In this document: piece by piece, positions 3,634 to 33,111 of the stretch
Layout of the letters: every line of letters starts with the position of its first letter
How positions within the stretch are numbered: position 1 is the stretch's first letter
IMG/VR virus record: IMGVR_UViG_3300011113_000805
Coordinates: 62,001-126,000 of that record
Direction: 5' to 3' (one strand)
Length of the DNA: 64,000 nucleotides
Program-made: the position numbers and the translations under genes
The notes under the pieces: generated by a model
Told to the model about the DNA's origin: nothing
Databases searched by the model: none
The model's input: only the letters and a program-made list of their open reading frames with translations

Positions 3634-6600
3634 TTATCTTGGCCGTTCTAAAGAATCTATTTCTTGGTTATTAGCCAATGCATTAACAAGACTACCTACT
3701 GACATGTTATTTTGATTCACTAGTTTTCCTGTGGTTGTCAGAACGGTTTTTGTAAATTCTTCAGCATCAATCGTCAGGTTCATTATCATGTGAATATTGA
3801 TAGGTTTGTTCTCGATTCCAACTTCCTTTGATGTTATCATTTTTTTCGCAAAATCCTCAACTACAACATCAATGGGTTTGAGATGTATATCATTAAGCAT
3901 CTCATTAAGTTCGTACATTGCATCAATTGCGCCACTTATTGAGTCTTTAATCGATTCAGTATATGCCGTGGAATAAGCCTCAGTCTTGCTTCCAATCATT
4001 CCCATTGCTACTGCAATGTCATCGGCCTTGCCCATGAATGCCAGCAAGTTATTTGCACCTTTAAGATTGACGCCTGAACCAAAATACTTATTAGTTACAT
4101 CTGCAAAGCCTAACATGTGTGGCACAATATTGCTGAGGTTTGACACAATAAGTGGGATCTGGACACTTGCGACTGTAATTTTCTCTCTCATCTCAGGCGT
4201 GCCTATTCCAATGATAGAGTTTGTTATTGAGTTTATTGTTTCAACGATACCCTTGAGTAAATCAAGGTTTCCTCTTGCATCCTTGCCAAGTTTTATTCCA
4301 CTGGCAAGGCTAATCATGCTGTCAATAAGCTTCTTAAGAACACCGTCTGGTTTTGCAAGGTCTACCATAAAGTCAGAATTAACTTTAAGCAGATCCTTGA
4401 ATGCTGCCATTCTTGCATGCATTTCTGTTGGATTTGCACCGCTTGTTGAAATAGTAGCTGCAGTCTGACTCAGGCTGCTCGCAAGAGAACTTACAAGAGA
4501 GCTTAGCGTTTCAATAATTCGGATCGCAGTATCAGCTTTTTTAAGCTGATCTTCAGGTATATCTTTCACAATTTCAATAATCGCATAAACAAATTTTGAG
4601 GCGGTGTCGGTTATATTAAGCATGAACATGTGCAAAGATGTAAGAACACCTGATAGGTTGGTACCAGTTGCGCCAGCCATTCTACTAAAAAATCCTGGGT
4701 CTTTGGTAAGCTCAACGGCTGCAGATAGTGGCTGCATCATTGAGGCTATAGCTTCAATAATTTTGACCGCTATCTCACCTTTAGACTTAAGTTCTTCAAT
4801 ATTAACACCTGACACTGCTGCAAGTATGCTTTTTATGAACTGAGGGATCTTGTCATTGATCATATCCATGAATTTCTGCATGACTTCTAATCCCTTTTCT
4901 ATCAGGGTGTTAGCAAAGGGACTCAATGACGTAAGACCAAGCATTAAGGAACCAGTAGCTATAGTTCCTACGGCAAGCATAATTCCTGCAAATGTTCCAA
5001 AGAAGAATGCCAGCTTTTCAGCATCAAACGGAATTTTGTTTATTGATTCAACTATTTCCGAAAGGTATGTGACTATTGTTGGTATTGCTTCGGATATGGC
5101 AGCAAGAATAAGATCCATGAGTTTCATTCCGACTATTGCTAAGACAAACCCTGAACCCATCATTGCTGTTGTCGCAATTGAAGCGGCAACAAACGCAGCA
5201 ACCGATGCCTGGATTGTTGCCAAAGCAGCCATTCCTACAGCAGCTAGCATCATAATTCCTGCAAATTTTGCGACAGACGTGAATGCGGTTGTCATTAAAT
5301 TGGTAAAGGCATCAACTTCAGGAGGTTTCATGCCTAAACCATTAACCAAACCCACCAAGGCAACAAACCCTACCATGAAAAGTCCTATAGCGACTAACAT
5401 AGCAGCTGCCGCGGCAAGGCCGACTTCCAATGCTCCGGTGGCGGCTCCACCGGCGGCGGCGGCACCTAATGCAATGGCAGATATTGTTGCGACCAATGTT
5501 GCAGCCATTGCAGCCGCAGCAACATTCATCATTGAATCTATCTCAGTCGGAGTAACTCCTGATTTTTTAATCAGATATGCAATTCCTACTAATCCTGCCA
5601 TGAAGCCCAACATGGCAACTAGTATACCGGCAGCAACAGCAAATAGTGTTCCGGCTGCTTTTGAAACTTTACTCATGTCCAGTTTATTGACTGCTTCAAC
5701 CAAGCCGCCAATGCCTTCCACGGCATCAGTTATTACACTAGTTGCAGGTGTTTCTGCGGTAGATCCGATTGCCTTGAGCATAATGTTCTCGAGTCCTTTG
5801 ACAAATAATCCCCAAGCTGCACTGGCGGCAAGCTTAATGATTGAAGTTGTCAATGCAAGACCAAGCTGTGTAGCAAGAATGACAGAGTATGCAGTAATAA
5901 GGTATGGACCAAACTTGACTGCAGCCGTCAATATGAGATCTCCAAGCGCCTTTAATACTCCTGGGAGAGCTTTTTTCATCGCCGCCAGAATAGGAGCAAA
6001 GATCTTGGAGGCAAACCCCCCAGCATTTGGCACATAGGTTGATGGATTGCTTAGGAAGCTTGCGATATCTTTAAGGCCTGTCTCTAACAATAATCCCATC
6101 TTTTCAATCAGGCCAGCAATGATTAAAGAGACAGTTTCAACAAACTCAACGAGACCATCCTTCATCATTGTGGCGCCGGCGCCACCCTTAAATGCCCCGG
6201 AAAGGTTATCGATAAGATCATTTACTGCTTTTCCTGGATTCGTTTTTAGATCAGCAAAGAATTGTTGAAAAGTTTTTCTGAGTTCCTTAACAATATTTCC
6301 TATGCCATCTTTTCCGGAAAGCACCTTGTGTAGGCCATCAAACATTTTTCCAACACCAGGAAATGCCTCGACAAATACCTTACCAACTTCTCTACCTAGC
6401 TGTCTCATGCCACGCAGGAGAGATGCAAGGTCATAAAGAACTGCTCTGCCTTTTTGAGAACGTGATAATCCCTCAGCAAAACCTGTAAAGAAGTTTGTTA
6501 TAAAGCCTCCACTATAGTTGAGTGCTTCAACCATTTGCTTGATGGCGTTTCCTAAATCCTCAAACATCTCCTGCTGTGATTTTTGCTTTTTTGCTGATAT

Positions 6601-7926
6601 TTCAGCATCTTTGGAAAGCTCCTGATATGACTTGCCAGCATTCTTGGCTGATAGGGCCTGCTCTACAATGGCCTCGTCAAGTCCGGCTGTCTGTGCCAGG
6701 AGCTGCTTCTCCTGACGGGTCATCATGTCTATAGATTTGCCGGTTGTAGCAAACGAAGTCCTCAGCATCTCAAGGCGCTTACCTGGGTCCTGTTCCTTCA
6801 TCATTTGCAATGCATCAACATTCATTCCAAATGCCTGCGCAAGCTTTGATGCATTGGTCGCAGCAGTCTCAAAGTCATCGAATGCTGCGACAAGACCTTC
6901 AATCTGTTTTACTTCGAGCCCCAATTTCTTTACATAGACTACGGTTGCTGCAACCTGTGCGGCTGAAAGTTTTCCATACTTTGCCGTGCTTTGAAGCATG
7001 TAAGCCATGTCACGGGCAATCACCTTGGAACTCATTCCAAATTTTGCCGACATGTCTTTTGCAATCTTTTCCAAGTCGCTTACTAGCGATGTTGCAGACT
7101 TCCCAGCCAATCTTGATGCAATGACGAGGCCTTTCATGTCTTCGCCGGTAAGGCCCAAGCCCATTTGTGCAATGACTAGTGTGCCGGCAAGATTTTTGTA
7201 GTCATCATCAAGCATATTGACAGCATCACCCAATGCCACCGCCATTTCACGTGATGCATCGATTGCGGCAGCGACACCTCCTGGTCCTACACCAAAGAAA
7301 CGTGAAAATGATTTTCCTGTTGCTGCTGCGGCTGTCTTAATTGAGCCTAAACCATCAACTACCTGTTTTCCAAATCCTTCACTGATATCACCAAACTGCT
7401 CTCTGACTCTTTCCATTGCGTCAAAGACTTCGGTATTTGCTGCAAGTTCTGCAGCCTTTTCTGTAAGAATATCGAATATTTTGAAAGGAATGCCTATTAT
7501 TGCAATTGCAAGATTAGAGACAAATTTTCCTGCTGCAATGAGACCTTCATTAAATGCCGCTATACCGGCCAGGCCCTTTGAAAAGATACCTTTTATCCCA
7601 CTTCCTAAAGACTTAAACGCCCTGTCTATGTCAATTGTAGCTTTTTTTGTTTTGTCAGCCTCTTTATTGGCATCTTTAAGACCGCCAAGCAAGGCATTAG
7701 TTGTTTCACCGGCAGTCTTGCCTACGGAGTCTAAAGACCTCCTCATCTCTTCAAGTCTTTCGACTGTTCTATCAACTTCCTCACACTTGAGGGCCTTACA
7801 AAGTTGTAAGGCCAACTCAACTTGGTCAGCGATCCTGGAGGCTTGTGTGTCCAACATCCTAGACCTTTCTACAAGGACTGTATTGATCTGTTGCTGTATT
7901 CTCAGGTTCTCAGCGTCAGTTGTCAT
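3634..7926 (-). CDS. Tail tape measure protein
   Basis: 1430 aa, Ala/Gly/Leu-rich and helical, with central hydrophobic segments. It lies downstream of the tube and chaperone genes. Confidence 0.85.
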   Translation of the reverse strand: MTTDAENLRIQQQINTVLVERSRMLDTQASRIADQVELALQLCKALKCEEVDRTVERLEEMRRSLDSVGKTAGETTNALLGGLKDANKEADKTKKATIDIDRAFKSLGSGIKGIFSKGLAGIAAFNEGLIAAGKFVSNLAIAIIGIPFKIFDILTEKAAELAANTEVFDAMERVREQFGDISEGFGKQVVDGLGSIKTAAAATGKSFSRFFGVGPGGVAAAIDASREMAVALGDAVNMLDDDYKNLAGTLVIAQMGLGLTGEDMKGLVIASRLAGKSATSLVSDLEKIAKDMSAKFGMSSKVIARDMAYMLQSTAKYGKLSAAQVAATVVYVKKLGLEVKQIEGLVAAFDDFETAATNASKLAQAFGMNVDALQMMKEQDPGKRLEMLRTSFATTGKSIDMMTRQEKQLLAQTAGLDEAIVEQALSAKNAGKSYQELSKDAEISAKKQKSQQEMFEDLGNAIKQMVEALNYSGGFITNFFTGFAEGLSRSQKGRAVLYDLASLLRGMRQLGREVGKVFVEAFPGVGKMFDGLHKVLSGKDGIGNIVKELRKTFQQFFADLKTNPGKAVNDLIDNLSGAFKGGAGATMMKDGLVEFVETVSLIIAGLIEKMGLLLETGLKDIASFLSNPSTYVPNAGGFASKIFAPILAAMKKALPGVLKALGDLILTAAVKFGPYLITAYSVILATQLGLALTTSIIKLAASAAWGLFVKGLENIMLKAIGSTAETPATSVITDAVEGIGGLVEAVNKLDMSKVSKAAGTLFAVAAGILVAMLGFMAGLVGIAYLIKKSGVTPTEIDSMMNVAAAAMAATLVATISAIALGAAAAGGAATGALEVGLAAAAAMLVAIGLFMVGFVALVGLVNGLGMKPPEVDAFTNLMTTAFTSVAKFAGIMMLAAVGMAALATIQASVAAFVAASIATTAMMGSGFVLAIVGMKLMDLILAAISEAIPTIVTYLSEIVESINKIPFDAEKLAFFFGTFAGIMLAVGTIATGSLMLGLTSLSPFANTLIEKGLEVMQKFMDMINDKIPQFIKSILAAVSGVNIEELKSKGEIAVKIIEAIASMMQPLSAAVELTKDPGFFSRMAGATGTNLSGVLTSLHMFMLNITDTASKFVYAIIEIVKDIPEDQLKKADTAIRIIETLSSLVSSLASSLSQTAATISTSGANPTEMHARMAAFKDLLKVNSDFMVDLAKPDGVLKKLIDSMISLASGIKLGKDARGNLDLLKGIVETINSITNSIIGIGTPEMREKITVASVQIPLIVSNLSNIVPHMLGFADVTNKYFGSGVNLKGANNLLAFMGKADDIAVAMGMIGSKTEAYSTAYTESIKDSISGAIDAMYELNEMLNDIHLKPIDVVVEDFAKKMITSKEVGIENKPINIHMIMNLTIDAEEFTKTVLTTTGKLVNQNNMSVGSLVNALANNQEIDSLERPR

Positions 7927-7944
7927 ACAAAACCCTCACAGGTC

Positions 7945-7952
7945 TATTTATA
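7945..7952 (-). promoter_or_regulatory. Late promoter-like motif TATAAATA
   Basis: Exact T4 late promoter consensus, 18 nt before the tape measure ATG. Confidence 0.6.
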
Positions 7953-7967
7953 AAGTTGGGCAAGTAC

Positions 7968-8207
7968 TTAAATGTCCCAGTCTTCGCCTGTAAGGTCTTT
8001 CCACCTTTTTGCTGCCACCTGGCGTCTCTCCATCGCCTCCCTGACTCTCTCGGGTTTCGATGACTGACGAAGAGTGTGAAGAAGTGACCGACAAGACTCA
8101 ACGGCCTCCCAAAGCGTTGCAATGAGCCTGGGAGGGCCTGAGATCTCAAGGGTCTTTCTCTTACCGATAACATACTCGAGGATTGATTTTTTAAGTGTAG
8201 GTTCCAT
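7968..8207 (-). CDS. Hypothetical protein (79 aa), possibly leaderless
   Basis: Fills the gap between chaperone and tape measure genes. There is no SD, but a promoter-like motif ends 6 nt before the ATG. Confidence 0.65.
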   Translation of the reverse strand: MEPTLKKSILEYVIGKRKTLEISGPPRLIATLWEAVESCRSLLHTLRQSSKPERVREAMERRQVAAKRWKDLTGEDWDI

Positions 8208-8213
8208 AGGAGA

Positions 8214-8221
8214 TATCTATT
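8214..8221 (-). promoter_or_regulatory. Late promoter-like motif AATAGATA
   Basis: Matches the nATA[ACG][AC]TA motif recurring upstream of structural genes. Confidence 0.5.
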
Positions 8222-8232
8222 CACTAACTTGA

Positions 8233-8496
8233 CTAAGTGAAACGCCTCAGTCTAGAGGGAACTTGTTCTCTTCCCCTTCCCTGCATTGCCCTAACATCAG
8301 GCGTGTTATGATGAAGTGCCCTGGAGTTGGGGTCTCCTCTCTCATTGGTCTTCTTGATTTCCTCGTTGATTCTTCTGATAAACCAGATTCGATAACTCAC
8401 CGGGATATTGTAAGTCTCCCAGTAAGAGAAACCCATATAGTACATCAGAAGGAAAGACTGCTCAAGAAAGATCTCTTTATCGCCCGGCGTCAGGCC
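8233..8496 (-). CDS. C-terminal extension of tail assembly chaperone (T4 gp51-like / lambda gpT analogue), probably reached by frameshift
   Basis: The frame of the 70-aa ORF is open upstream as GLTPGDKEIFLEQSFLL-MYYMGFSYWETYNIPVSYRIWFIRRI and overlaps the end of the upstream gene. It has no in-frame ATG/GTG/TTG before 8445. Confidence 0.6.
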   Translation of the reverse strand, partial: GLTPGDKEIFLEQSFLLMYYMGFSYWETYNIPVSYRIWFIRRINEEIKKTNERGDPNSRALHHNTPDVRAMQGRGREQVPSRLRRFT

Positions 8497-9325
8497 AAAA
8501 GAATGTTGCTCCCAACGGGATGCGCACCTCCGACATCTCCGAGCAAGCGGGACAGTCCATATGCGACTTCATGTCAATTCCAGGTTCAGCCTGATCAATT
8601 GTTTGCCTGAGAAAGAGAGAGTCTCTAGCCGGAAGAGACCTGATAAATGACCCAATAAGGGCCTTGTCACTCTTTCCTTCAACCTCAACAATTGAGAACT
8701 GGAGGCGGGTTGTTACCAAGTTGTCAGCCATACCACCGGCTTTCTTCTTTCTTTCAGAGATGAGCATAATCTCCTCTTCATCGGCACCAGTGAGAAACTT
8801 AAACTTTACTCTCTTCTTGGTGATAGGTAGCGTCACCTCAAAGAGGTTGGCACCAAACTGCACAGGTTGCAACTCCAAAGGCTTGATTTCAAGCTCCGAT
8901 AGGTTGAAAGTCTGCTTCGACTTTGTGCTACATGCAGGACATTCAACCTCTACATTATAGTCGGCCCCGTAACCGGTAATACGAAGTGCGACCATCAATG
9001 CATTACGGTCACCTGACAACATCTTTGTAACATCAATTCTCTTATCTACCAGACAGCTCTTGATGAGTTCGGTGATGACAGTGCCCTTCTTGATGAGTGC
9101 CTTTGAGGTAAGAATGTCCTCCTCACGAGCAGTCATTGCCCTAACATCAACTGTCTCACAGCCGTGCAATGGAGAGTCCGATGGATATGTCAAGCCCCTC
9201 GATGGAAGTGGCACAGCTTCCACTGGAATTTCGAAACCAAAATCATCCTTCATCACATCTCGAACAGGAACACCTGGGCCGGCCCCACCCGTAAATACAC
9301 CGTTACGCTCATTTCTTTCAGACAA
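8477..9325 (-). CDS. Tail/baseplate assembly chaperone (T4 gp26-like)
   Basis: 282 aa, TTG start. Motifs: VPLPSRG, MTAREEDILTS, GDRNALMVALRITGYG, two CPAC zinc knuckles, C-terminal FFWP. It lies between the tube and tape measure genes. Confidence 0.8.
   Translation of the reverse strand: MSERNERNGVFTGGAGPGVPVRDVMKDDFGFEIPVEAVPLPSRGLTYPSDSPLHGCETVDVRAMTAREEDILTSKALIKKGTVITELIKSCLVDKRIDVTKMLSGDRNALMVALRITGYGADYNVEVECPACSTKSKQTFNLSELEIKPLELQPVQFGANLFEVTLPITKKRVKFKFLTGADEEEIMLISERKKKAGGMADNLVTTRLQFSIVEVEGKSDKALIGSFIRSLPARDSLFLRQTIDQAEPGIDMKSHMDCPACSEMSEVRIPLGATFFWPDAGR
8495..8503 (-). promoter_or_regulatory. Putative +1 ribosomal slippery site TTC-TTT-TGG
   Basis: A UUU to UUU re-pairing moves translation from FF-WP into the FF-GL frame. 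Confidence 0.55.
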
Positions 9326-9364
9326 GATTGCCTCCGATAGCTTTGTAGATTATCGGAGGCAATC
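9326..9364 (-). promoter_or_regulatory. 14-bp perfect hairpin containing the chaperone gene's SD
   Basis: GATTGCCTCCGATA-(11 nt)-TATCGGAGGCAATC lies immediately before the TTG start, with GGAGG in the 3' arm. Confidence 0.7.
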
Positions 9365-9389
9365 GATGAATGTTAAATGCTATCGTGAA

Positions 9390-9878
9390 TCAGTATTGGA
9401 GGACACAGTTGTCCATCTGTAAGGTAAGGTTGATTTCGGCAGGAGCCTCGTCTTCGTAGGAGACATCACCAAAGGTGGCATTGGTGATCTGTGCTCCTTT
9501 GATGTCCCAAAGTTCTACCACAGTGCCAATTGGATCAAGCATTTTTAGCTGGAGATCGCGCTTGTAGAAGTCGGCATAGCCTGCACGACCGGAGACAGTC
9601 TCCATATGTGTGCGAATCCACTCCATCACCTGCTGAGCACCTGAGGGTGCAATGGGATCATAGAGTGTGACCGCCATTGTGCTGAACTTGGCTTTACCAG
9701 CAACATAGCGAACTGTGTTAATCCAGTGAATTTCCTGTTGTCCTACTTCGATAGTAGGACGGGCTGCCGTCTTCACGAGGAATGCGTCGATTCCCTCAAT
9801 TGCCAGAACCCATCGAAACTTACGCTTGGGCTCAAAGCGATTAGGAAGCATATCGGTAACTGAAAGTGTCTCTGCCAT
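9390..9878 (-). CDS. Tail tube protein (T4 gp19-like)
   Basis: 162 aa: FEPKRKFRW, LYDPIAPSGAQQVMEW, GYADFYKRD, LDPIGTVVELW. It follows the sheath genes; SD AAGGAG. Confidence 0.9.
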   Translation of the reverse strand: MAETLSVTDMLPNRFEPKRKFRWVLAIEGIDAFLVKTAARPTIEVGQQEIHWINTVRYVAGKAKFSTMAVTLYDPIAPSGAQQVMEWIRTHMETVSGRAGYADFYKRDLQLKMLDPIGTVVELWDIKGAQITNATFGDVSYEDEAPAEINLTLQMDNCVLQY

Positions 9879-9894
9879 TTTAACTCCTTGTCAT

Positions 9895-9902
9895 TATCTA
9901 TT
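9895..9902 (-). promoter_or_regulatory. Late promoter-like motif AATAGATA
   Basis: 16 nt before the tube ATG. Confidence 0.55.
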
Positions 9903-9914
9903 CACAAGCTGGGC

Positions 9915-12821
9915 TCAAATCTCAACATTGGGATTGGAAACCACAAAGTCGAGTGAGATGAACTCGACAGACCGTGTGGGCTGGATGAAGATCTTGCCAC
10001 GAATGGTGTTGTTCTCCACATCAGCTTGTGTCGTTGTGGTTGTGTCGATCTTCACACGGTACCGATCCACACCCTGCTGGGCCTGAATCTGCTTCAAGAT
10101 TGGATCGACAAGGGCTGAGAACCGAGCAAGGGTAGCGGCACGGTTAGGCTCAAAGAGGATAGAGTTGGCAATGTTTCTCACCTTCCTACGAAGGTCGATG
10201 AGAAGACGACGAACATTGACCCTGTCAAGAGCTGATGCTCGAGCCAAGAGTGTCTTCTGTCCATAGACAACCGGACCAACTGAACCTGGCAATGTTGTAA
10301 TAGGATTAATGTCATTGTCATATAGGACATCAAGGTTATCACGATTGAGCTTCGTCTGCACTTCCACGACTGTGGAGAGTGCTCCACGTGTAAATCCTGC
10401 AGGGGCAAACCAAGGATAAGCAAGTGCATCATTCATGGCGAAAGCACCCAGGACCGCAACCGAAGGTGGGCAGACAAGATTGGTTCTTGTTGCCGGATCA
10501 GTCATCACAACATCCGGAAAGTAGGCCGCGGCAAAGGAAGTGTCAAGTGTCCTGTTTCTTAGACCATTCGCAGTGAGTCCCACCGAGACGGTTTCAACGG
10601 AGGAGGTGATGACCGAATCACTGATATTTCTCTCCTCAATGTCCATGATGTAAATGGCATCGAAACGAGATGTAACGGCATCAATCGCATAGTCAGTAAC
10701 ACCTGGCTCACGAATACCTGGAATTGCAAGGATCTGGATGTCGGCGAAAGCCTTGTCGGCCAGAACATCAATTGCCTTCCTGTAGGCGGCAACTGTATTG
10801 CCTGCTGGACCACCCTGTGTTGCCGTGAAATCCATCTCACGAGCTGCGGCATTGTTGAGGAGATTTGCACGATCACCATTGAAGATGTTGGTGCCGTTGA
10901 AACCGCCTTGGACAAAGAAGGAGAACTTCAGGTACCTGCGAGTTGTGAAATCAGCAAAGTCTGAAACATTAATGAATCTTGCAGGTGCTGCAGCTCCTAA
11001 TGTACCATCTCTACGATAGGATGCTGATGCCCAAAGGTTGGGATTAGGATACCCAGTAAGTGATGAGGTGTCTGCCACTCTCACCTTTGTCAATGAGAAG
11101 AGGTTATTGTTATATGTGTCAGCACCGGCACTAGTCCATGGAACAGCTGAAACTGTAAAGTAGTTGCTAAAATACTTGGTCATCGAAGATACGGTATTGT
11201 CAGCATATGTGTTCTTGTTAGGTTCACTAACAGAGTCATTTACCTCAAACTGAACACCCCAATGGAAGTAAGGTGTTGTTGTTGCTGCTGTGCCGGTTCC
11301 AAGGGCAATTGTTCTACGCATAGGAACAGGAAGCATCTTCACATTATTGATACGAGTTAGCTGATTTGCACCTGCAATATTAAGGTAGTTAACACCTCTA
11401 AATCCAAGTGGTAGAGCATCAGCTGGGATTTCCTGGTTCTCGACTTCAGCAGGAATTTCGAGCCTAATATAGGAGGAGAGATTAGGATAGTTTCCTTCTA
11501 CAACAAGCTTCTGTGCCCCTGCTGCCCTATCAAAGTCATAGTAAGTCTTAGTATCACCAATGACTTTTCCAATATACCTCTCAGAAGCAGGATTCAATGT
11601 GAGACCAATAAAGCTCTCTAGCACCTGTGGTGTATCATCCGTGTCTTCAAACTCCCTCACAAAGAGTGAGAAAGAACCGTATTCTGATGTGGGATCGGTA
11701 GATGGTGTAATGTTACTGATAGAGATCTTAAACTTGGTGTTAGCATATGTGCCATCATCAAGTGAATGAACCCGGAAGAGATCGACAGGTGATCCACCAA
11801 AATCCTGTGAGATAACCATTGGTGAGAATGCAGCCTGGAAACGATCCTCAAATCCCTCGAAGTTAGGAACCGTAGTTGAGCCTGTGTTGAAGGCCTGTGA
11901 CCCGGTGAGAATGAAGGCAATCTCTTCAGAGACACCTGCAATGTTTCCACCGTCACCATTCGTGATATTTCCTGTACCTGTCACAACAGTATATGCACGA
12001 TATGCATCATATGATGTATAGAGATAGTGACCGGCCTGTTCGGTCTTTGTAGGATCTGTATTGAAGATCTCAGCAAAATAGTTTGGAGCTTGTGGATCGA
12101 AAGAAGCCGTTACAATATTGGGATATGTTGCAGTTGCCTTGTGTCCGCTAAGAAGCAGAACAAACTCTTGAATACCAGCTGCAGATAGTTTAACTGCTCC
12201 TGTCATAAATCCAAACACTGTGTTTGGAACAGCAGTTGCAGGAAGGTCATTACTAGTGACACCTGAAGATGAGAGGACAGGAAGAACACCTGATGGTGCA
12301 AAGATGACACCGCGAAGGACAGGAATTGAGTTTGCTGATGTCTGTGCGCCGGCCTCTGAGAAAATAGTGACCCCACTTGACTCTGACATATAGCAACCAA
12401 GGAAGAATGTACGGCCTGTGTAATTGCCAAGTGCGTATGGATTTGCACCAAGATCACCATTTGCCTGTACTTGTCTATCACCAACAACGAAGCCTGCGTT
12501 GGTCACCTTTCCTGCATTGTCACCAGCATTGGATGTTCTGATCTTTCCATCACCGGCGCCTAATATTCTAACATAAGTTCCTGCTCTGGCAGTTCTGAGC
12601 CACTCGTTCATTGCAAGTGGTCCAAACTTCTCACCATCTGTAGGGCCAAACTTGTTAACAAAGTCGGTAAAGTTTGCCACGGTGACCGGAACGAATGCTG
12701 GGCCCCTGAGTGAAGTTCCAATAACACCTGCAGGAACTCCCTGAGGTGCTGCGCTAGTAGGCCCTGAGAGATCGATCTCGCGGGTTCCAACGCCCGGGCT
12801 CTTGAATGTGAGTTCTGCCAT
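9915..12821 (-). CDS. Tail sheath protein, paralogue B
   Basis: 968 aa: N-terminal FKSPGV..REID and GPAFVPVTV; C-terminal PWFAPAGFTRG, LYDNDINPI, GQKTL, SALDRVNVRRLL, PTRSVEFI. Confidence 0.93.
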   Translation of the reverse strand: MAELTFKSPGVGTREIDLSGPTSAAPQGVPAGVIGTSLRGPAFVPVTVANFTDFVNKFGPTDGEKFGPLAMNEWLRTARAGTYVRILGAGDGKIRTSNAGDNAGKVTNAGFVVGDRQVQANGDLGANPYALGNYTGRTFFLGCYMSESSGVTIFSEAGAQTSANSIPVLRGVIFAPSGVLPVLSSSGVTSNDLPATAVPNTVFGFMTGAVKLSAAGIQEFVLLLSGHKATATYPNIVTASFDPQAPNYFAEIFNTDPTKTEQAGHYLYTSYDAYRAYTVVTGTGNITNGDGGNIAGVSEEIAFILTGSQAFNTGSTTVPNFEGFEDRFQAAFSPMVISQDFGGSPVDLFRVHSLDDGTYANTKFKISISNITPSTDPTSEYGSFSLFVREFEDTDDTPQVLESFIGLTLNPASERYIGKVIGDTKTYYDFDRAAGAQKLVVEGNYPNLSSYIRLEIPAEVENQEIPADALPLGFRGVNYLNIAGANQLTRINNVKMLPVPMRRTIALGTGTAATTTPYFHWGVQFEVNDSVSEPNKNTYADNTVSSMTKYFSNYFTVSAVPWTSAGADTYNNNLFSLTKVRVADTSSLTGYPNPNLWASASYRRDGTLGAAAPARFINVSDFADFTTRRYLKFSFFVQGGFNGTNIFNGDRANLLNNAAAREMDFTATQGGPAGNTVAAYRKAIDVLADKAFADIQILAIPGIREPGVTDYAIDAVTSRFDAIYIMDIEERNISDSVITSSVETVSVGLTANGLRNRTLDTSFAAAYFPDVVMTDPATRTNLVCPPSVAVLGAFAMNDALAYPWFAPAGFTRGALSTVVEVQTKLNRDNLDVLYDNDINPITTLPGSVGPVVYGQKTLLARASALDRVNVRRLLIDLRRKVRNIANSILFEPNRAATLARFSALVDPILKQIQAQQGVDRYRVKIDTTTTTQADVENNTIRGKIFIQPTRSVEFISLDFVVSNPNVEI

Positions 12822-12840
12822 GGATGCTCCTAATCTTTCT

Positions 12841-12848
12841 TATTTATC
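12841..12848 (-). promoter_or_regulatory. Late promoter-like motif GATAAATA
   Basis: 19 nt before the sheath B ATG. Confidence 0.55.
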
Positions 12849-15800
12849 ACTCAAACGAGACGCCTGAAGGCGTAATTACGAAGTCGATGGCAATGAACTC
12901 CACCGTCTTGGTCGGAACTATAACAATCTTACCATTAAGTCTATTCTGTTCAGCATCTTGAGGTGTGTTATTGGTGTCATCCATAATGACCCTGAACTTC
13001 TCGATACCGGCCTGTGCCTGGATCAGTGAGAGCTGAGGATTGACGGATGCAATAAACCGCGAGCGGACAGCCGGTGTATTCTGCTCAAAGAGGATACCAC
13101 CGGCGGCCTGACTGACAACCCTCTTAACTTCCAACAAGAGTCTGCGAACATTAACCCTGTCAAGTGCTGATTTCTTCAATTGTAGTGTCTTCTGCCCAAA
13201 GATGACGAATCCACCAGATGGGAATGTTGCAATGGGATTGATCCTTGCATCGTACAAGGTGTCCCTGTCACCCTGGTTGAGTCGCACCTGGACGTTATTG
13301 ACGAAGTCAAGTGCAGCCCTGTTAAAACCTGCAGGGGCAAACCATGGGTAAGCAACCCGGTCATTGAAAGCAATTGCGCCCATTGCGGCAACTGATGCAG
13401 GAACCTTCACACGACGAGCCAGCGCATTATCAGTGATATAGACATCCGGAAAGTATGTAGTGGCATAGTTGTTATCAACATTCAAGGAGACGAATGTCTC
13501 TGATGTCTGCCTAACTGATGGGCGCCGACCGGTGGTATCATCGAATATCCGGACACCGTTATCATCATATGAGGGGATATCCCTAACAAACATCGCCAGT
13601 GAGTAATCACGAGCAGCGTCCTGCGCATAAGTTGTGACCAGGGCTTCCCTGATGCCTGGGATTGCAAGCAGATTAATGTTTGACGAGATCTCATCAGTCA
13701 TTATATCAGTTGCTGTCCTGTAGGCATTGACAATATTGTTAGAAACTCCGGCACCGGCTGCATTAGTAACTAGTCCATCCTCGACGGCTCCGGAAGCCTT
13801 ACCACCAGTCTCTGTCGATGAGGCCTTGTCATTCATTAGACGATTGTCCCTGTCCAGAATGTTGAGACCATCAAATCCGCCATAGAAGACTGTAGTGAAC
13901 TTGTTGAATGCAGCAAACCTGTTGAAGACAACTGATGAAGAGGCCACAAGGGTTGCCATTGTCACCCTATCGCCTGAGGCGTAATTGACTCTGTAGTCAA
14001 TAGGTGAAGGCTGACCATTTCTAACATAGGCGGCCTCACGCATATGCACCTCGGCAGTGCCGGTGACTGCTGAGATTGTAGTGTTTGCCAGTGCAACACG
14101 TGAGAGACTGAACTTGTTAGCGTTGAAGGCATCAGCTGCAGATCCAGTAACCAGAACATCTTGCTTAAAGATACCCTGGAATTTCGTGTAGCTCTTCACC
14201 AGGTTGTTTTCTAGTGTTCCTGCGTTATAGTTGAGGACAGCATTCTTCACGGAAGAAGTCGTTGGCATTGACTGCACGACAACACCCCAGTAGAGACGTG
14301 AGTCGGCGCGCTCATTAGGACCAGGAGCACCAATGTTACCATCAGTTTCACTCATCGTTCCCTTTGTCACCTTGAACCGGAAGGGCAAGGGTGGAAGAAC
14401 AGATGCAGTCAGCGGGAGAGCAGTTCCATCACCACCGAAGAGCCTGGGGCTACCAGTGAATGTTGTTCCACCAAATGTCAGTGAACCTGCGTAGTCAGTC
14501 AAAGAGTCAGTTGTCTTGAGAACGGGAATTCCTCTGAACCCGAAAGGTAGCGCGGCAGGTGGTACCTGCGCAGACTCAATAAGGGGATTCATCACAACCC
14601 TGAAATTGACGCTCCTGTTAGGGTACTTGCCTGAGATGATAAGGCGACGCTCGGACTGCTCATCGGCATCAAAGTTCCACTGGACTTTCTTGTCACCAAT
14701 TGCGCGTGCAATGTAGTTTTCGGCTCGAGGATTCAAGCTAAGAGCAGGATAGTACTCGAGTCCTTGTGGATTAAAGTCATCATCTCCAAATTGTCTTAGA
14801 ATAACATCGAAGGTACCATAAGGTTGATCAGGATCTGTGCTAGCCTGAATGTTCGCAATGGAGACCTTTAGTTTGTCATTGGCATACTCACCATCGGAGA
14901 TTGCCTCAAAGTGGAAGAGGTCATACTCATATGCACCGAAGGGCTGTGAGATGAAGGATGGTGTCTGGGGGGTTGTGAAACGAGTATCGTACCTGCCAAA
15001 AGCCGTCCTGTATGCTGAAGTACTTCCTGAGAGGATTGCAACCGTAGGATCTGTCACGGCAGTGCCTGTCATTACAGGTGCTAGCTCTTTCTCGACAGGA
15101 AAATCCAGGTAAAGCAGGTGTTTCTTAGAGGCAAAGAGATCAGGGTCGGTGTTGAGTACTCGTGAGACATATGCGGAGTCACTTGGATCAAGTGATGCGG
15201 TAAGGATCCTGACACCAGCAAAGCCATCATCACTATCAAAGCTTGACCCGGCTGCCGAGGAGATGATGAGCTTGAACCTTCTGGCAAGACCTGCTGTGTT
15301 GTTATCTGGGCCTAATGAAGCAGTTGTTGCCGCAGGTGAGAATGTCTTGTCAAAGGGGGCCACCTGAATACGAGTACCGGATGCAGGAAAGATCACCGCC
15401 CTGACAAGATTGACATTGTCTCCGCCGGTTCCGTCAACACTGAATGTAGGATTGTCAGTAAAGATCGGAAAGCCCTCTGCCTCCGTGGGGCCGGCAGTTG
15501 AGGCTGAAATATAGTGGCGTGCCACAAGAAACTGTACAGTGGAGTCGGAGTAGGGTGTACTTGCTGCTGTTGAAGCTGCAGGGGTGATCTTGAATCCTGC
15601 GCTCTTCACGGTACCATTAGTGATGGTGTCACTAATGTCAGAAGCATTGGAATTTGCACCACCACCAAGCACTCTGAGGAATGTTAGTGACTGTTTGTGC
15701 TTCAAGAACTCATTAACAGCATAGGGTGCAAATCGCTGTGGATCCAGGTCACCAAACCTGGCTGTAAAGTCTGTTATCGTCGCAAGGGTGACTGGCACGA

Positions 15801-15924
15801 ATGCGGGCCCCTTTTGTGATGTACCAATGACACCACCTGGAACGCCGACGGGCTGCTGAGCACCGGCAACGAGCTCGATCTCCTGCTCGTAAAAACCTGG
15901 GGATCTGAAAGTTTGCTCGGCCAT
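12847..15924 (-). CDS. Tail sheath protein, paralogue A
   Basis: Likely start MAEQTFRSPG at 15924 (SD TAGGAG), 1025 aa. It has the same sheath motifs: PWFAPAGFNR, LYDARINPI, SALDRVNVRRLL, PTKTVEFI. Confidence 0.93.
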   Translation of the reverse strand: MAEQTFRSPGFYEQEIELVAGAQQPVGVPGGVIGTSQKGPAFVPVTLATITDFTARFGDLDPQRFAPYAVNEFLKHKQSLTFLRVLGGGANSNASDISDTITNGTVKSAGFKITPAASTAASTPYSDSTVQFLVARHYISASTAGPTEAEGFPIFTDNPTFSVDGTGGDNVNLVRAVIFPASGTRIQVAPFDKTFSPAATTASLGPDNNTAGLARRFKLIISSAAGSSFDSDDGFAGVRILTASLDPSDSAYVSRVLNTDPDLFASKKHLLYLDFPVEKELAPVMTGTAVTDPTVAILSGSTSAYRTAFGRYDTRFTTPQTPSFISQPFGAYEYDLFHFEAISDGEYANDKLKVSIANIQASTDPDQPYGTFDVILRQFGDDDFNPQGLEYYPALSLNPRAENYIARAIGDKKVQWNFDADEQSERRLIISGKYPNRSVNFRVVMNPLIESAQVPPAALPFGFRGIPVLKTTDSLTDYAGSLTFGGTTFTGSPRLFGGDGTALPLTASVLPPLPFRFKVTKGTMSETDGNIGAPGPNERADSRLYWGVVVQSMPTTSSVKNAVLNYNAGTLENNLVKSYTKFQGIFKQDVLVTGSAADAFNANKFSLSRVALANTTISAVTGTAEVHMREAAYVRNGQPSPIDYRVNYASGDRVTMATLVASSSVVFNRFAAFNKFTTVFYGGFDGLNILDRDNRLMNDKASSTETGGKASGAVEDGLVTNAAGAGVSNNIVNAYRTATDIMTDEISSNINLLAIPGIREALVTTYAQDAARDYSLAMFVRDIPSYDDNGVRIFDDTTGRRPSVRQTSETFVSLNVDNNYATTYFPDVYITDNALARRVKVPASVAAMGAIAFNDRVAYPWFAPAGFNRAALDFVNNVQVRLNQGDRDTLYDARINPIATFPSGGFVIFGQKTLQLKKSALDRVNVRRLLLEVKRVVSQAAGGILFEQNTPAVRSRFIASVNPQLSLIQAQAGIEKFRVIMDDTNNTPQDAEQNRLNGKIVIVPTKTVEFIAIDFVITPSGVSFE

Positions 15925-15958
15925 TATTGGTCTCCTAAGAGTTTCGTAACTCAATAGT

Positions 15959-15966
15959 TATGTATT
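15959..15966 (-). promoter_or_regulatory. Late promoter-like motif AATACATA
   Basis: 34 nt before the sheath A ATG. Confidence 0.5.
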
Positions 15967-17898: not shown

Positions 17899-19068
17899 TT
17901 AGCCTATCCTGATAGCTTTGCCCATTGGAATGGGAACTGCAAGGAGAGTTTTTCGAATATTATCAACTTGAGCTGCCTGAGTCTCGATGAGCTTGTCTAT
18001 CGTCATAGTGTCAAGCATCTCTTTTAGCTGTGTAATGAGCTTATCTTTCTCATCCCTGCCGTTAGAAACAAGATCACTTCCATTAAGCTGCAGCTCGCCA
18101 CCTGGGATTGGGACAGATCCAAACTTTGATCTCACCAACCCCAAGAGTTCCTTGCTGAGAGCTAGTGTGTACTGACGTGTCCACTGACGTCCAATAGAGT
18201 TGATGCGACTATAAACAAAGTTTCCAAAAGGTACGTTAGAAAGGTTGCTAATGCCGTAAAGAGAAGGATCATGAATGTCCGGATTAAATGGATCTTGAGG
18301 AAATCCAACATTTATCCAAAGTCTAGGTGGAATGTCGGAAACTGGTGTAGGGAATATCCGGATATTCTTGCCAACTATCTGATAACTATAGTTTGACCTT
18401 CTGACCTTGTTAGAGAGAGACATCTGTCCTCCACGGAGGATGTCCTCAAAGACCGGCAGAACATAGAAAACAGTCTCCGGCGTGAATGACTCGAAGGAGA
18501 ACTCATTGTTGAGGTAATTGATAGCCGAGGTTGTGTCAAAGAAACGATAGGCTGCCTGAGGGTTAAAGTGCATCACTTCAAATATGCGAAGCTTTCCTTG
18601 AGATGGATTGAGCGATGATGAAACTATCGGAACTCCTGAGCCATCAACAAGGTCTGTGTAGAGATTGTAGTCTTGTCTTCCTTGCTGCAACTGAATCGAT
18701 GCGGAGACAATGTTGTAAGAGCCACCAACACCCGCCGTAGACCCATATGGCTCTGCAAGTTTTAAAGCAAACTCTAATGTCTCACGAGGAAACTTTTGCT
18801 CCATCCCATCAAGTGTCCCAGTAGCGGCACCAAGCAAGTTATTGAGCTGTGATTTTGCCTGATACTGATTAACAATGGCACCATACTCGCAGAAAGCTTC
18901 CTCGAAACAGGCCCAAATTTGTTTCGAAGTGAGCTCCACTGAGAGAACATCATCACCAAGCTTTCTCTTGACAAATGTAACCATGGCATCGGCCTCTGCC
19001 TGAAACTGTGTATCAGAATCAAAGAAGCCAAATGGTGTCGGACTGAGGGTGTTTGCAAATGAGGCCAT
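17899..19068 (-). CDS. Neck / head-tail adaptor (T4 gp13-like)
   Basis: 389 aa: VKRKLGDDVLSVELT, QWTRQYTLALSKELLGLVRSKFGSVPIPGGELQLNG. Confidence 0.85.
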   Translation of the reverse strand: MASFANTLSPTPFGFFDSDTQFQAEADAMVTFVKRKLGDDVLSVELTSKQIWACFEEAFCEYGAIVNQYQAKSQLNNLLGAATGTLDGMEQKFPRETLEFALKLAEPYGSTAGVGGSYNIVSASIQLQQGRQDYNLYTDLVDGSGVPIVSSSLNPSQGKLRIFEVMHFNPQAAYRFFDTTSAINYLNNEFSFESFTPETVFYVLPVFEDILRGGQMSLSNKVRRSNYSYQIVGKNIRIFPTPVSDIPPRLWINVGFPQDPFNPDIHDPSLYGISNLSNVPFGNFVYSRINSIGRQWTRQYTLALSKELLGLVRSKFGSVPIPGGELQLNGSDLVSNGRDEKDKLITQLKEMLDTMTIDKLIETQAAQVDNIRKTLLAVPIPMGKAIRIG

Positions 19069-19740: not shown

Positions 19741-20538
19741 TCACACCGCGCCGTAGTTGATGACCTCGAAGGAGGCACCGTTATCGAGGCACCACTGGGC
19801 CGTCGCCTGCCACTTCTCGTGATCTACCGATGTCGTGTGACCCTTCACTTCGTAGAGTGTCTTACCATCAAGTGTGAGGAAGTCTGGGATGTAGGTGCGC
19901 TCGACTCCCTTCGGATCGATGTAGGAAATGCGAATGTCGTGCTGCTTCGTGATGGGTAAGCCGGCGCTGATGCAAGAGTCCAGGAATCGTGTCTCCCAGG
20001 AAGAGTGCATATACTCCTCCCTGCCCGTGAATGGGTTGAGCTTCCACTCGGCCCTGTAGGGAGCTTGAGGACCGATCTTTCCCTGTTCGAGGAGGTCAAT
20101 GGCTCGATCTGTCTGGCGCTTTCTCTTCTCTGCCGACTCGGGCTTTTGCCAGTTTTCAGAGTTTGTCTTGGCTGATCGCTTTCTGACTTCGGGTGTTATA
20201 TGTGATCGCATTAATGCAGCTTGTGCTATAGTTTTTTCTTTATTTTCATTGTAATAGCGCTCTAAATTTTGACGATTTTTAGCACCGATCTTGGCCTTAG
20301 ATTCGGCAGTCAAACGACCTTTGATCCTTGCTGAGTGTCCGTGAATGTATCGAAGAAACCTCATACCTTGAGATTTAGAGAAAGGTGCATCTTGACCACA
20401 CCCACACTCACATTTTGGAGGGACACCTCCGTAAAAATGTTTCAATAGATAGCTCTCGTAAGAGAGGCCATGGCATCTGGACACGTGTGAGGCTAAACGC
20501 TCAAATGACTTAAAACAAAGTTTGCATGTAGTTTCCAT
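19741..20538 (-). CDS. Free-standing putative homing endonuclease: Zn-finger/NUMOD-like N-terminus plus TnsA-like PD-(D/E)xK nuclease
   Basis: CKLC...H...H and PPKCECGCG motifs, a basic linker, then YMHSSWETRF...YIPDF...LYEVKG. Confidence 0.7.
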   Translation of the reverse strand: METTCKLCFKSFERLASHVSRCHGLSYESYLLKHFYGGVPPKCECGCGQDAPFSKSQGMRFLRYIHGHSARIKGRLTAESKAKIGAKNRQNLERYYNENKEKTIAQAALMRSHITPEVRKRSAKTNSENWQKPESAEKRKRQTDRAIDLLEQGKIGPQAPYRAEWKLNPFTGREEYMHSSWETRFLDSCISAGLPITKQHDIRISYIDPKGVERTYIPDFLTLDGKTLYEVKGHTTSVDHEKWQATAQWCLDNGASFEVINYGAV

Positions 20539-32844: not shown

Positions 32845-33111
32845 TTATGTATCTCTTACACCGATAAACTGTCTGGCAGCTGTAACAGTTTTCACGATGT
32901 CAGGTGAAGGCCTCCATCCTTCTGTGAGCCAAGCCTCTCGATTTGGATCAAAAAACTGTTGCTCACATTGACGACAACAGCCTGCTAGCTCAAATGCATC
33001 GACATCATAAGAGCCTACAAGCACACCATCACAGATGGGACAGAATGTAGGAACTTTAGGTGATGTGCAATTAACTGTTTGGAAGTGAATCGGTGGCGCT
33101 AACGTGCGCAT
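32845..33111 (-). CDS. Small Cys-rich (zinc-binding) hypothetical protein (88 aa)
   Basis: CPIC...GCCRQC. The likely ATG at 33111 overlaps the end of the Mre11-Rad50 gene. Confidence 0.6.
   Translation of the reverse strand: MRTLAPPIHFQTVNCTSPKVPTFCPICDGVLVGSYDVDAFELAGCCRQCEQQFFDPNREAWLTEGWRPSPDIVKTVTAARQFIGVRDT
32846..32853 (-). promoter_or_regulatory. Late promoter-like motif GATACATA
   Basis: 16 nt before the ATG at 32829. Confidence 0.5.

What the first reader, a model, noticed from the sequence alone, without database searches (positions are those of the whole stretch)
9915..15924. Two tandem, enlarged tail sheath paralogues with a single tube gene
Seen: 1025-aa and 968-aa genes both have complete sheath N- and C-terminal motifs and share an internal module (ISQxFG...DLF...DGxYANxKxKxSIxNI...YGxF). 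They diverge widely in ~500 aa of insertions, and each has its own promoter motif and SD. Established: T4 has one sheath gene (gp18, 659 aa), whereas eCIS such as PVC and Afp use several sheath paralogues in ordered layers. Inference: this phage builds a heteromeric or position-specific sheath with large surface domains.
Basis: partly seen in the sequence, partly recalled or inferred. Interest (0 to 1): 0.62.

Follow-up and report, generated by a model that had tools for sequence, protein, structure and literature searches.

The report
Two conserved tail sheath paralogues
An uncultured freshwater jumbo phage, like all of its many metagenomic relatives examined, carries two (in some relatives three) full-length, selectively maintained copies of the contractile tail sheath gene next to a single tube gene, so its tail sheath is probably built from more than one subunit type, which in phages is documented only for the unrelated phage PaBG.

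Summary
Window 12847-15924 (A, 1025 aa) and 9915-12821 (B, 968 aa), both on the minus strand, are complete T4 gp18-type sheath proteins. They are 35% identical and collinear over their whole length, and one tube gene follows them. The enlargement predates the duplication, because the middle regions are homologous rather than independent insertions.

The pair is old and conserved. In 74 of 78 related IMG/VR loci an A orthologue is followed by a B orthologue, and the other four loci end before B could appear. A and B form separate, parallel clades. The duplication lies after the split from the single-sheath Microcystis phage Mel-JY01.

B has an insertion hot-spot that adds 135-707 aa in relatives, and it was duplicated again in some lineages. 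A conserved late-promoter-like motif and a Shine-Dalgarno sequence precede each gene.

A sheath made of both proteins is the best reading. Whether they alternate along the trunk or sit at specific positions cannot be decided here. Phage PaBG (two sheath proteins, both in the virion) and Afp/PVC are precedents, so this is an independent new member of a known kind in a large uncultured clade.

The parts
12847..15924 (-). Sheath paralogue A, 1025 aa (upstream copy). It has a gp18-type core (about residues 1-95 and 690-1025) and about 600 aa of outer domains.
   Evidence: AF2 model: pLDDT 87, pTM 0.88. VIA-align top match is the T4-like KP1 sheath 9f4a, Z 35.1, rmsd 3.4, 447 aligned. The PDB profile search finds T4 gp18 at E 8.9e-48.
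9915..12821 (-). Sheath paralogue B, 968 aa (downstream copy). It has the same domain order as A. Residues about 133-161 are the insertion hot-spot in orthologues.
   Evidence: AF2 model: pLDDT 86.7, pTM 0.88. Foldseek top match is T4 gp18 9mkb, E 1.7e-22.
9390..9878 (-). Single tail tube gene, 162 aa.
   Evidence: PHROG 4542 'tail tube protein' at 2.1e-29 and a weak Pfam T4_gp19 match. It is the only copy in the record.
15958..15965 (-). Late-promoter-like motif ATACATAA, 33 nt upstream of the A start.
   Evidence: The equivalent motif ATA[N][A/T]TA is present 10-50 nt upstream of A in 39 of 40 distinct relatives.
15932..15936 (-). Shine-Dalgarno AGGAG, 7 nt before the ATG of A.
   Evidence: Read from the sequence.
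12840..12847 (-). Late-promoter-like motif ATAAATAA overlapping the stop codon of A, 18 nt upstream of the B start.
   Evidence: The motif class is present upstream of B in 32 of 41 relatives.
12827..12831 (-). Shine-Dalgarno AGGAG, 5 nt before the ATG of B.
   Evidence: Read from the sequence.
9894..9901 (-). Late-promoter-like motif ATAGATAA upstream of the tube gene.
   Evidence: The motif class is in the B-tube spacer in 43 of 43 relatives.
8477..9325 (-). Baseplate hub protein (T4_baseplate family), the next gene of the tail module.
   Evidence: Pfam PF12322 at 8.8e-17 and PHROG 150 at 1.7e-21.
17899..19068 (-). Neck / head-tail adaptor protein (gp13-like) upstream of the sheath genes.
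   Evidence: PHROG 211 at 1.4e-8. The orthologue in L088 carries Pfam Phage_T4_gp13.

Best explanation
A and B are both working subunits of one contractile tail sheath that polymerises around the single tube protein.

An enlarged (about 1000 aa) gp18-type sheath gene duplicated in tandem at the base of a large clade of uncultured aquatic T4-like jumbo phages. The two copies then specialised and have been co-inherited ever since.

Each copy keeps the parts that make a sheath subunit polymerise and contract. These are the N-terminal arm, the inner gp18 domain III/IV core and the C-terminal arm. I therefore infer that they interlock through the usual strand-exchange 'handshake' into one lattice.

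My preferred arrangement is a regular mixed lattice along the trunk. A would be the size-constant partner. B would carry an outward-facing loop that tolerates large insertions and so acts as an evolvable surface-display position.

Shown here: homology, fold, intactness, conservation, purifying selection, separate promoter-like motifs and the insertion hot-spot. Inferred: presence of both proteins in the virion, co-polymerisation and the geometry.
For: Sheath identity of both copies:
- Family matches.
- High-confidence models match T4-type sheaths: Z 35.1 and Foldseek E 1.7e-22.
- The first 21 residues and the last 4 are the only parts modelled below pLDDT 50, as expected for exchange arms that order only in the polymer.

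Conservation:
- A followed by B in 74 of 78 loci, with no counter-example.
- A and B are separate clades with parallel topology.
- (A,(B+C)) has support 98 and is sister to the single-sheath Mel-JY01 group.
- dN/dS is 0.06-0.16 for A and 0.05-0.28 for B, with near-equal dN.
- No indels in either gene in the four runs laid, from three studies.

Specialisation:
- Sites conserved in each paralogue but different between them cluster in the C-terminal arm region.

Expression signals:
- Each gene has an SD and a clade-conserved promoter-like motif.
- Two metatranscriptome libraries hold contigs over both genes.

Arrangement (bears on trunk heteropolymer against position-specific use):
- A and B are collinear over all domains, including the outer ones.
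- B inserts reach +707 aa at one site.

Co-assembly:
- A-core with B-core complex prediction: weak support, ipSAE 0.59 against a best control of 0.00. That mark was reached by 58 of 80 solved complexes and 2 of 110 mismatched pairs, but scores at or under 0.60 came from only 7 of those 80 and from both mismatches that passed. Partner pLDDT was at least 80 and the runs agreed in at least 96% of contacts.

Precedents:
- PaBG has two sheath proteins, both in the virion proteome.
- Afp2 and Afp3 chains are both present in the Afp trunk entries 6rbn and 6rc8.
Against: - There are no proteomic or structural data for this uncultured phage, so virion presence, stoichiometry and arrangement are all inferred.
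- The complex prediction is weak and may come from the model's memory of solved sheath lattices. It does not separate A-B from A-A or B-B contacts.
- Position-specific paralogues in eCIS (Pvc3 and Pvc4 appear only in the baseplate entry 6j0n) are also conserved, so conservation alone does not favour a trunk heteropolymer.
- RNA-library contigs may derive from contaminating DNA.
- The nearest cultured relative, Mel-JY01, manages with one sheath gene, so a second subunit is not structurally required by this tail type.
Confidence: 0.55

Rival explanations
1. Position-specific use. One paralogue forms the bulk of the sheath. The other forms only one or a few rings at the baseplate or neck end, adapting the lattice to the baseplate, neck or fibres, as Pvc3/Pvc4 and Afp4 do in eCIS.
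For: - Pvc3, Pvc4 and Afp4 chains occur only in baseplate entries (6j0n, 6rao/6rgl), while Pvc2 fills the trunk entries.
- The paralogue-specific conserved residues in the C-terminal arm could mark a specialised junction.
- The B insertion modules could be a collar or fibre-attachment ring.
- Further B-derived copies in subclades fit stacked special layers.
Against: - A and B are collinear through every domain and evolve at nearly the same rate.
- Each has its own strong SD and conserved promoter-like motif, with no sign that one is expressed at a low level.
- PaBG's two sheath proteins each appear as a separately identified gel band of the virion proteome. Band intensities are not given.
Confidence: 0.3
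2. Alternative sheaths. A and B are used in different particles or conditions, giving two tail types with different surface properties, rather than being mixed in one tail.
For: Each gene has its own promoter-like motif, so differential expression is conceivable. The outer domains differ strongly, at 23-27% identity.
Against: - Both motifs belong to the same class and sit in the same late structural module.
- The spacer is only 25 nt, and no switch (invertible segment or recombinase) lies nearby.
- The strict co-inheritance of both in 74 of 74 informative loci fits mutual dependence better.
- An RNA-library contig bridges the A/B junction.
Confidence: 0.07
3. One copy is redundant or decaying, or has left the sheath for a non-sheath role such as a decoration or a decoy.
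For: B scores below the Pfam cut-off for Phage_sheath_1 (20.2 against 31.4 bits), and A scores below it for Phage_sheath_1C in the protein scan (24.4 against 26.9). The third paralogue 'C' of a subclade has lost all family-model matches, so sheath copies can drift far.
Against: - Both are intact over about 1000 codons in every relative.
- dN/dS is about 0.05-0.3.
- Both models are full sheath folds at pLDDT 87.
- The arms and the tube-proximal core are the best conserved parts, at 44-50% A/B identity.
- Both exceed the PF17482 cut-off in the genome search.
Confidence: 0.04

Closest known systems
Pseudomonas phage PaBG and its proposed 'Lupandier' group (two tail sheath proteins, gp76 and gp213)
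   Same: A jumbo myophage from fresh water (Lake Baikal) with two full-length sheath paralogues of similar divergence: 38% identity there, 35% here. They are attributed to gene duplication, and both were identified in the structural proteome (PMC7412058).
   Different: - The origin is independent. The PaBG sheath is only about 12% identical to A in the fold comparison (rank 12), and its subunits are about 58 kDa against about 105-110 kDa here.
- The PaBG genes carry distant numbers (76 and 213), whereas these are adjacent.
- Here the pair spans a very large uncultured clade, with an insertion hot-spot in one copy and further duplications.
T4 gp18 tail sheath (single-gene sheath of T4-like phages)
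   Same: It is the best sequence and fold match (E 8.9e-48, Foldseek E 1.7e-22; Z 35 to the T4-like KP1 sheath). The gene neighbourhood is the same: gp13-like neck, sheath, gp19-like tube, T4-type baseplate hub.
   Different: T4 has one 659-aa subunit forming a homopolymer. Here there are two subunits of about 1000 aa, and only about 450 residues superpose on gp18-type structures.
Extracellular contractile injection systems with several sheath paralogues (Afp2/3/4, Pvc2/3/4, AlgoCIS)
   Same: Several sheath paralogues are encoded next to each other and built into one contractile sheath. Afp2 and Afp3 both occur in the trunk structures, and Pvc3/Pvc4 in the baseplate-proximal part (chain lists; the review PMC12961389, states that the Afp sheath is polymerised from Afp2, Afp3 and Afp4).
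   Different: Those are small (350-450 aa) subunits of headless particles from bacterial loci. This locus sits in a phage head-tail module with terminase, portal, protease and a gp23-type capsid protein. The paralogues arose independently, inside the T4-like sheath lineage.
Microcystis phage Mel-JY01 (nearest cultured relative) and uncultured huge phage LR756508.1
   Same: The sheath lineage and local gene order are the same.
   Different: Mel-JY01 has one 813-aa sheath gene. LR756508.1 has two 824-aa sheath genes about 1 kb apart that group with Mel-JY01, not with A or B, so that duplication is separate.

Membership tests
Phage tail sheath, T4 gp18 type (Pfam PF04984 + PF17482) | Sequence match to the sheath family models | tested here: met
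   A: PF04984 at 34.4 bits (cut-off 31.4); PF17482 at 24.4 bits in the protein scan and 29.9 bits in the genome search (cut-off 26.9). B: PF17482 at 31.9 and 36.4 bits; PF04984 at 20.2 bits, below the cut-off. PHROG 23 'tail sheath' at 3.9e-58 (A) and 2e-52 (B). Profile against PDB: T4 gp18 at 8.9e-48.
Phage tail sheath, T4 gp18 type (Pfam PF04984 + PF17482) | Sheath fold (inner domains equivalent to gp18 III/IV) | tested here: met
   A: VIA-align Z 35.1, rmsd 3.4, 447 aligned to 9f4a, and Z 29-32 to the pyocin, Streptomyces CIS and AlgoCIS sheaths. B: Foldseek E 1.7e-22 to T4 9mkb. Models have pLDDT 87.
Phage tail sheath, T4 gp18 type (Pfam PF04984 + PF17482) | N- and C-terminal exchange arms for the inter-subunit handshake | tested here: inconclusive
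   Both start MAE.TF.SPG...EI.L and end ...VEFI..DFV.., conserved in all orthologues. Residues 1-21 and the last 4 are unstructured in the monomer models. The actual strand exchange was not modelled. The heterodimer prediction gave only weak support.
Phage tail sheath, T4 gp18 type (Pfam PF04984 + PF17482) | Encoded next to the tail tube gene in a tail module | tested here: met
   The order neck, A, B, tube, baseplate hub holds in the window and in all relatives that reach that far.
Phage tail sheath, T4 gp18 type (Pfam PF04984 + PF17482) | Present in the virion and contracts on infection | not testable with these tools
   The phage is uncultured and no proteome or image is available.
Contractile tails with several sheath paralogues (PaBG-like phages; Afp/PVC-type eCIS) | Two or more full-length sheath paralogues serving one tube | tested here: met
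   Two sheath genes and one tube gene are in the 257-kb record. Relatives have two or three.
Contractile tails with several sheath paralogues (PaBG-like phages; Afp/PVC-type eCIS) | All paralogues incorporated in the same particle | not testable with these tools
   Only indirect evidence is available: purifying selection on both, strict co-inheritance and a weak complex prediction.
Afp/PVC-type eCIS (as a locus type) | A headless bacterial locus without capsid and packaging genes | tested here: not met
   Terminase large subunit, portal, head maturation protease and a gp23-type major head protein lie 5-20 kb away on the same strand. The record is classed as a virus. It works like a multi-paralogue sheath but is not an eCIS.
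PaBG / 'Lupandier' phage group | Sheath paralogues orthologous to the PaBG pair | tested here: not met
   The PaBG sheath is a distant structural match only (12% identity, BFVD rank 12). The A/B split lies inside the Mel-JY01/immuto-related lineage. PaBG sequences were not put in the tree.

The most novel reading that the evidence does not exclude
The clade builds an obligate hetero-polymeric phage sheath. A and B (and B2 or C where present) occupy regular, non-equivalent lattice positions along the whole tail. B serves as an evolvable scaffold that displays inserted modules of up to about 700 aa on the tail surface. This would be the first such architecture defined in a phage and would be widespread in fresh and marine waters.
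Probability: 0.35. Interest if true: 0.65.

Novelty: new member of a known kind. Interest (0 to 1): 0.5.

Why it matters
Contractile sheaths of phages are treated as homopolymers of one protein. The only documented phage exception found in the held literature is PaBG, and no structure of a two-sheath phage tail turned up in the PDB and paper searches run here.

This finding shows that an independent sheath duplication has been fixed for a long time. The evidence is orthologue divergence down to about 40% identity in a very abundant, uncultured group of aquatic jumbo phages: more than 2,200 protein clusters and at least 13 mostly freshwater studies for this genome alone. In the same group the second copy repeatedly acquires large inserts and duplicates again.

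That gives a natural series (one, two or three sheath genes; inserts from 0 to 700 aa) for asking three questions:
- How does a contractile lattice accommodate non-identical subunits?
- Does heteromery change contraction mechanics?
- Can the tail surface be used for display?

It also warns annotators that using the sheath as a single-copy phylogenetic marker fails in this clade.

Tried and rejected
- **megablast against 50,697 phage records:** no match. No cultured close relative exists in that collection. The best tblastn hit was Mel-JY01 at 34% identity.
- **T4 late promoter TATAAATA:** absent upstream of either gene. ATAAATA and ATANATAA are not enriched window-wide: 5 found against about 7 expected. 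ATANTTA is also not enriched. The promoter claim therefore rests on position and on conservation in relatives, not on window counts. The window pattern was derived from the three sites themselves.
- **First tree with the mixture model on 102 rows:** did not finish. It was replaced by LG+G4. That tree placed Mel-JY01 with A, but the better model with outgroups did not. The 'careful' search also did not finish, so the quick PMSF tree is what is reported, and outgroup long branches remain a caveat.
- **dN/dS between the window and its nearest relatives:** could not be computed because dS is saturated. Closer pairs elsewhere in the clade were used instead.
- **Complex prediction on the C-terminal cores (A 680-1025 with B 625-968):** weak support only, ipSAE 0.59 against a best control of 0.00. 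No interface was reported, and it does not discriminate hetero- from homotypic contacts.
- **Pfam scan of the large B inserts and of paralogue C:** no domain family found. PHROG found nothing for C.
- **Read laying:** only assembled contigs were available, so relative expression of A and B cannot be ranked.
- **Literature searches for multi-sheath phages:** nothing beyond PaBG.
- **Models of single outer domains:** not made, because the structure-prediction cap (2 jobs) was used on the full-length proteins.
Full report
**1. What is in the window**

The window is bases 62001-126000 of a 257,178-bp IMG/VR virus record, estimated 76% complete.

- On the minus strand lie two long ORFs: 12847-15924 (A) and 9915-12821 (B).
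- A is 1025 aa from the ATG that has AGGAG 7 nt upstream. B is 968 aa, with AGGAG 5 nt before its ATG.
- The spacer between them is 25 nt.
- Downstream come a 162-aa tube protein (PHROG 4542, 2e-29) and a T4-type baseplate hub protein (PF12322, 9e-17). Upstream is a gp13-like neck protein.
- Further upstream on the same strand are a gp23-type major head protein, head protease, portal and large terminase.

This is therefore the tail part of a T4-like head-tail module of a jumbo phage, not a bacterial injection-system locus.

**2. Both ORFs are complete sheath proteins**

- Both match the Pfam sheath models and PHROG 23 'tail sheath' (2e-52 and 4e-58).
- A profile of the family finds T4 gp18 in the PDB at 8.9e-48.
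- AlphaFold2 models built from orthologue alignments are confident: A has pLDDT 87.0 and pTM 0.88; B has pLDDT 86.7 and pTM 0.88.
- Model A superposes on the T4-like Klebsiella phage KP1 sheath with Z 35.1 (rmsd 3.4, 447 residues). It matches pyocin, Streptomyces CIS and AlgoCIS sheaths with Z about 29-32.
- The best Foldseek match of model B is T4 gp18, at E 1.7e-22.
- In both models only the first 21 and the last 4 residues fall below pLDDT 50. This is the expected behaviour of the arms that become ordered only by strand exchange in the polymer. That last point is inference from established knowledge of T4 and pyocin sheaths.

**3. Relation between A and B**

- They align end to end at 35% identity, E 3e-165.
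- Identity is 44-50% in the N-terminal segment, the shared middle module (A 321-470) and the C-terminal core. It is 23-27% in the two outer regions.
- The roughly 550-600 residues beyond a gp18-size core are therefore homologous in the two proteins.
- Single enlarged sheaths of 880-1090 aa also exist in other jumbo phages, namely PA5oct and Atu_ph07. Size alone is not unusual.

**4. The pair is ancient and universal in a large clade**

- A scan of IMG/VR found 346 relatives, of which 78 loci were fetched.
- In 74 loci an A-type ORF is directly followed by a B-type ORF on the same strand. Where the contig continues, the tube gene follows. The remaining four loci end inside or just after A.
- A orthologues are 40-88% identical to A but only 30-36% to B, and the converse holds for B.
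- In a 103-sequence tree, A (support 100) and B (94) are separate clades with parallel internal topology.
- With a site-heterogeneous model and outgroups (S-RIM32, Atu_ph07, PA5oct, immuto), A and B together form a group (98). That group is sister to the one holding the single sheath of Microcystis phage Mel-JY01, the Flavobacterium phage immuto sheath and the two sheaths of huge phage LR756508.1.
- The duplication is thus placed after the split from the Mel-JY01 lineage and before the radiation of the clade. The LR756508.1 pair is a separate event.
- Caveat: the careful search did not finish, and some branches are long.
- The word-index protein search found more than 2,200 clusters at E ≤ 1e-20. 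None came from a named isolate.

**5. Both copies are under purifying selection**

- For orthologue pairs with unsaturated dS, dN/dS is 0.06-0.16 for A and 0.05-0.28 for B. dN is nearly equal in the two genes of the same genome pair.
- In the four runs laid (two metatranscriptomes and two metagenomes, three studies), contigs near-identical to this genome show substitutions but no indels in either gene.

**6. Signs of specialisation**

- Twenty-nine alignment positions are at least 80% conserved within each paralogue but differ between them. Eight of them (A 975-1017) lie in and just before the C-terminal arm region: A 'VIMDDTNN...' against B '.IDttTTTQ...'.
- B orthologues range from 960 to 1672 aa. 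Nearly all the extra length sits at one place, window-B residues about 133-161, as inserts of 135-707 aa. A stays between 988 and 1165 aa.
- No Pfam family matches the inserts.
- B has also duplicated again. A 244-kb contig has A + B1 + B2 in tandem, with B1 and B2 61% identical. Two IMG/VR loci show a third tandem copy.
- A subclade of 11 loci has a very divergent B-derived copy 'C' placed after the tube gene. It is 25-27% identical to B, with E down to 5e-78, and has no family-model hit.
- The window's genome has neither extra copy.

**7. Expression signals**

- The canonical T4 late promoter TATAAATA is not upstream of these genes.
- ATACATAA, ATAAATAA and ATAGATAA lie 33, 18 and 15 nt upstream of the A, B and tube start codons. 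They account for three of only five ATANATAA sites in the window.
- That pattern was derived from these sites, so the independent evidence comes from relatives. The motif ATA[N][A/T]TA occurs 10-50 nt upstream of A in 39/40 distinct loci and of B in 32/41. It occurs in the B-tube spacer in 43/43.
- The controls show the motif in 2% of coding windows and in 23% of a window further upstream of A.
Promoter function itself is inferred.
- Two metatranscriptome libraries from freshwater sediment contain contigs over both genes, one of them bridging the junction. DNA carry-over cannot be excluded, and contigs give no expression levels.
- The genome is found in lake, reservoir, river and other mostly freshwater samples of 13 studies.

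**8. Mechanism**

The best-supported explanation is that both proteins are subunits of one sheath around the single tube. The supporting points are:

- Both have every element needed to polymerise.
- They are strictly co-inherited and equally constrained.
- Each has diverged in a conserved way at the arm region.

A complex prediction of the two C-terminal cores reached the pass mark only weakly: ipSAE 0.59, best control 0.00, partner pLDDT at least 80, runs agreeing in at least 96% of contacts. By the tool's own calibration a pass at or under 0.60 is more often wrong than right unless the guess was already likely. It may also reflect memory of solved sheath lattices. I therefore count it as compatible with co-assembly, not as evidence for it.

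I prefer a mixed lattice along the trunk (about 0.35-0.4) over a position-specific ring (about 0.3) for four reasons:

- The two proteins are collinear through all outer domains.
- They evolve at equal rates.
- Both have equally strong expression signals.
- B's variable insert looks like a surface-display site.

None of this is decisive, and both arrangements have eCIS precedents. Afp2 and Afp3 chains are both present in the Afp trunk structures 6rbn and 6rc8, whereas Pvc3 and Pvc4 occur only in the PVC baseplate entry 6j0n.

**9. Comparison with what is known, and novelty**

- Pseudomonas phage PaBG is described as having two sheath proteins of 38% identity that arose by duplication. Both were identified in its structural proteome (PMC7412058). 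The phenomenon is therefore known in phages.
- The present pair is an independent case. The PaBG sheath is only a remote structural match, and its two genes are not adjacent.
- The case differs in subunit size, tandem arrangement, the insertion hot-spot, the further duplications and the size of the clade.
- Five full-text searches found no other description of multi-sheath phages.
- I rate it a new member of a known kind, of moderate interest. It is a solid comparative-genomic observation that makes heteromeric phage sheaths testable, but the architecture is unresolved and no cultured representative was found.

Noticed in passing
L088:8001-17945 (ENA contig k141_1991243, 244 kb) and L089: A relative carries three tandem sheath genes (1075, 1191 and 1015 aa) before the tube. 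The second and third are 61% identical to each other, so they are B-type copies from a more recent duplication.
   Followed up: partly
L051:8037-11429, L061:10511-13723, L066:16128-19364, L080:5023-8397, L082:10589-13771: A subclade has a third, very divergent sheath-like gene 'C' (about 1070-1140 aa) placed after the tube gene. It is derived from B in the tree and 25-27% identical to window B, but matches no Pfam or PHROG sheath model. Its role is unknown.
   Followed up: partly
B orthologues, e.g. L054:10916-15919, L057:3610-8379, L083:11170-15768: Inserts of 135-707 aa sit at a single site (window-B residues about 133-161). They match no Pfam family and may be surface-display or adhesion modules.
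   Followed up: partly
L002 (LR756508.1) 4020-6494, 7509-9983, 10095-14209: A 484-kb uncultured huge phage has its own pair of 824-aa sheath genes about 1 kb apart. Two large homing/HNH endonuclease genes follow them before the tube gene.
   Followed up: partly
window 9894-9901, 12840-12847, 15958-15965 and the equivalent sites in L006-L083: A conserved ATA[N][A/T]TA motif lies 10-50 nt upstream of the sheath and tube genes throughout the clade. It is probably this group's version of the T4 late promoter TATAAATA. The rest of the window was not surveyed gene by gene.
   Followed up: partly
window 19741-20538 (-): A 265-aa ORF between the major head protein and the neck genes matches endonuclease families (PHROG 15427, 1.9e-14). 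It may be a homing endonuclease inside the structural module.
   Followed up: no
window 20664-22589 (-): The major head protein is 641 aa, but the gp23-type match covers only residues about 367-623. It therefore has a long unexplained N-terminal region.
   Followed up: no
window 33071-36217 (-): A 1048-aa ORF matches an SbcD-like family at its N-terminus and an SbcC-like family over the rest. This suggests a fused SbcCD-type nuclease.
   Followed up: no
window 3634-7926 (-) and 161-3391 (-): Two very large ORFs (1430 and 1076 aa) lie downstream of the baseplate hub and have no PHROG match. They are probably tail, baseplate or fibre proteins.
   Followed up: no
window 9880-15879: Near-identical DNA occurs in lake, reservoir, river and sediment metagenomes of 13 studies and in two sediment metatranscriptome libraries. 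The phage is a widespread freshwater one, and its host is unknown.
   Followed up: partly
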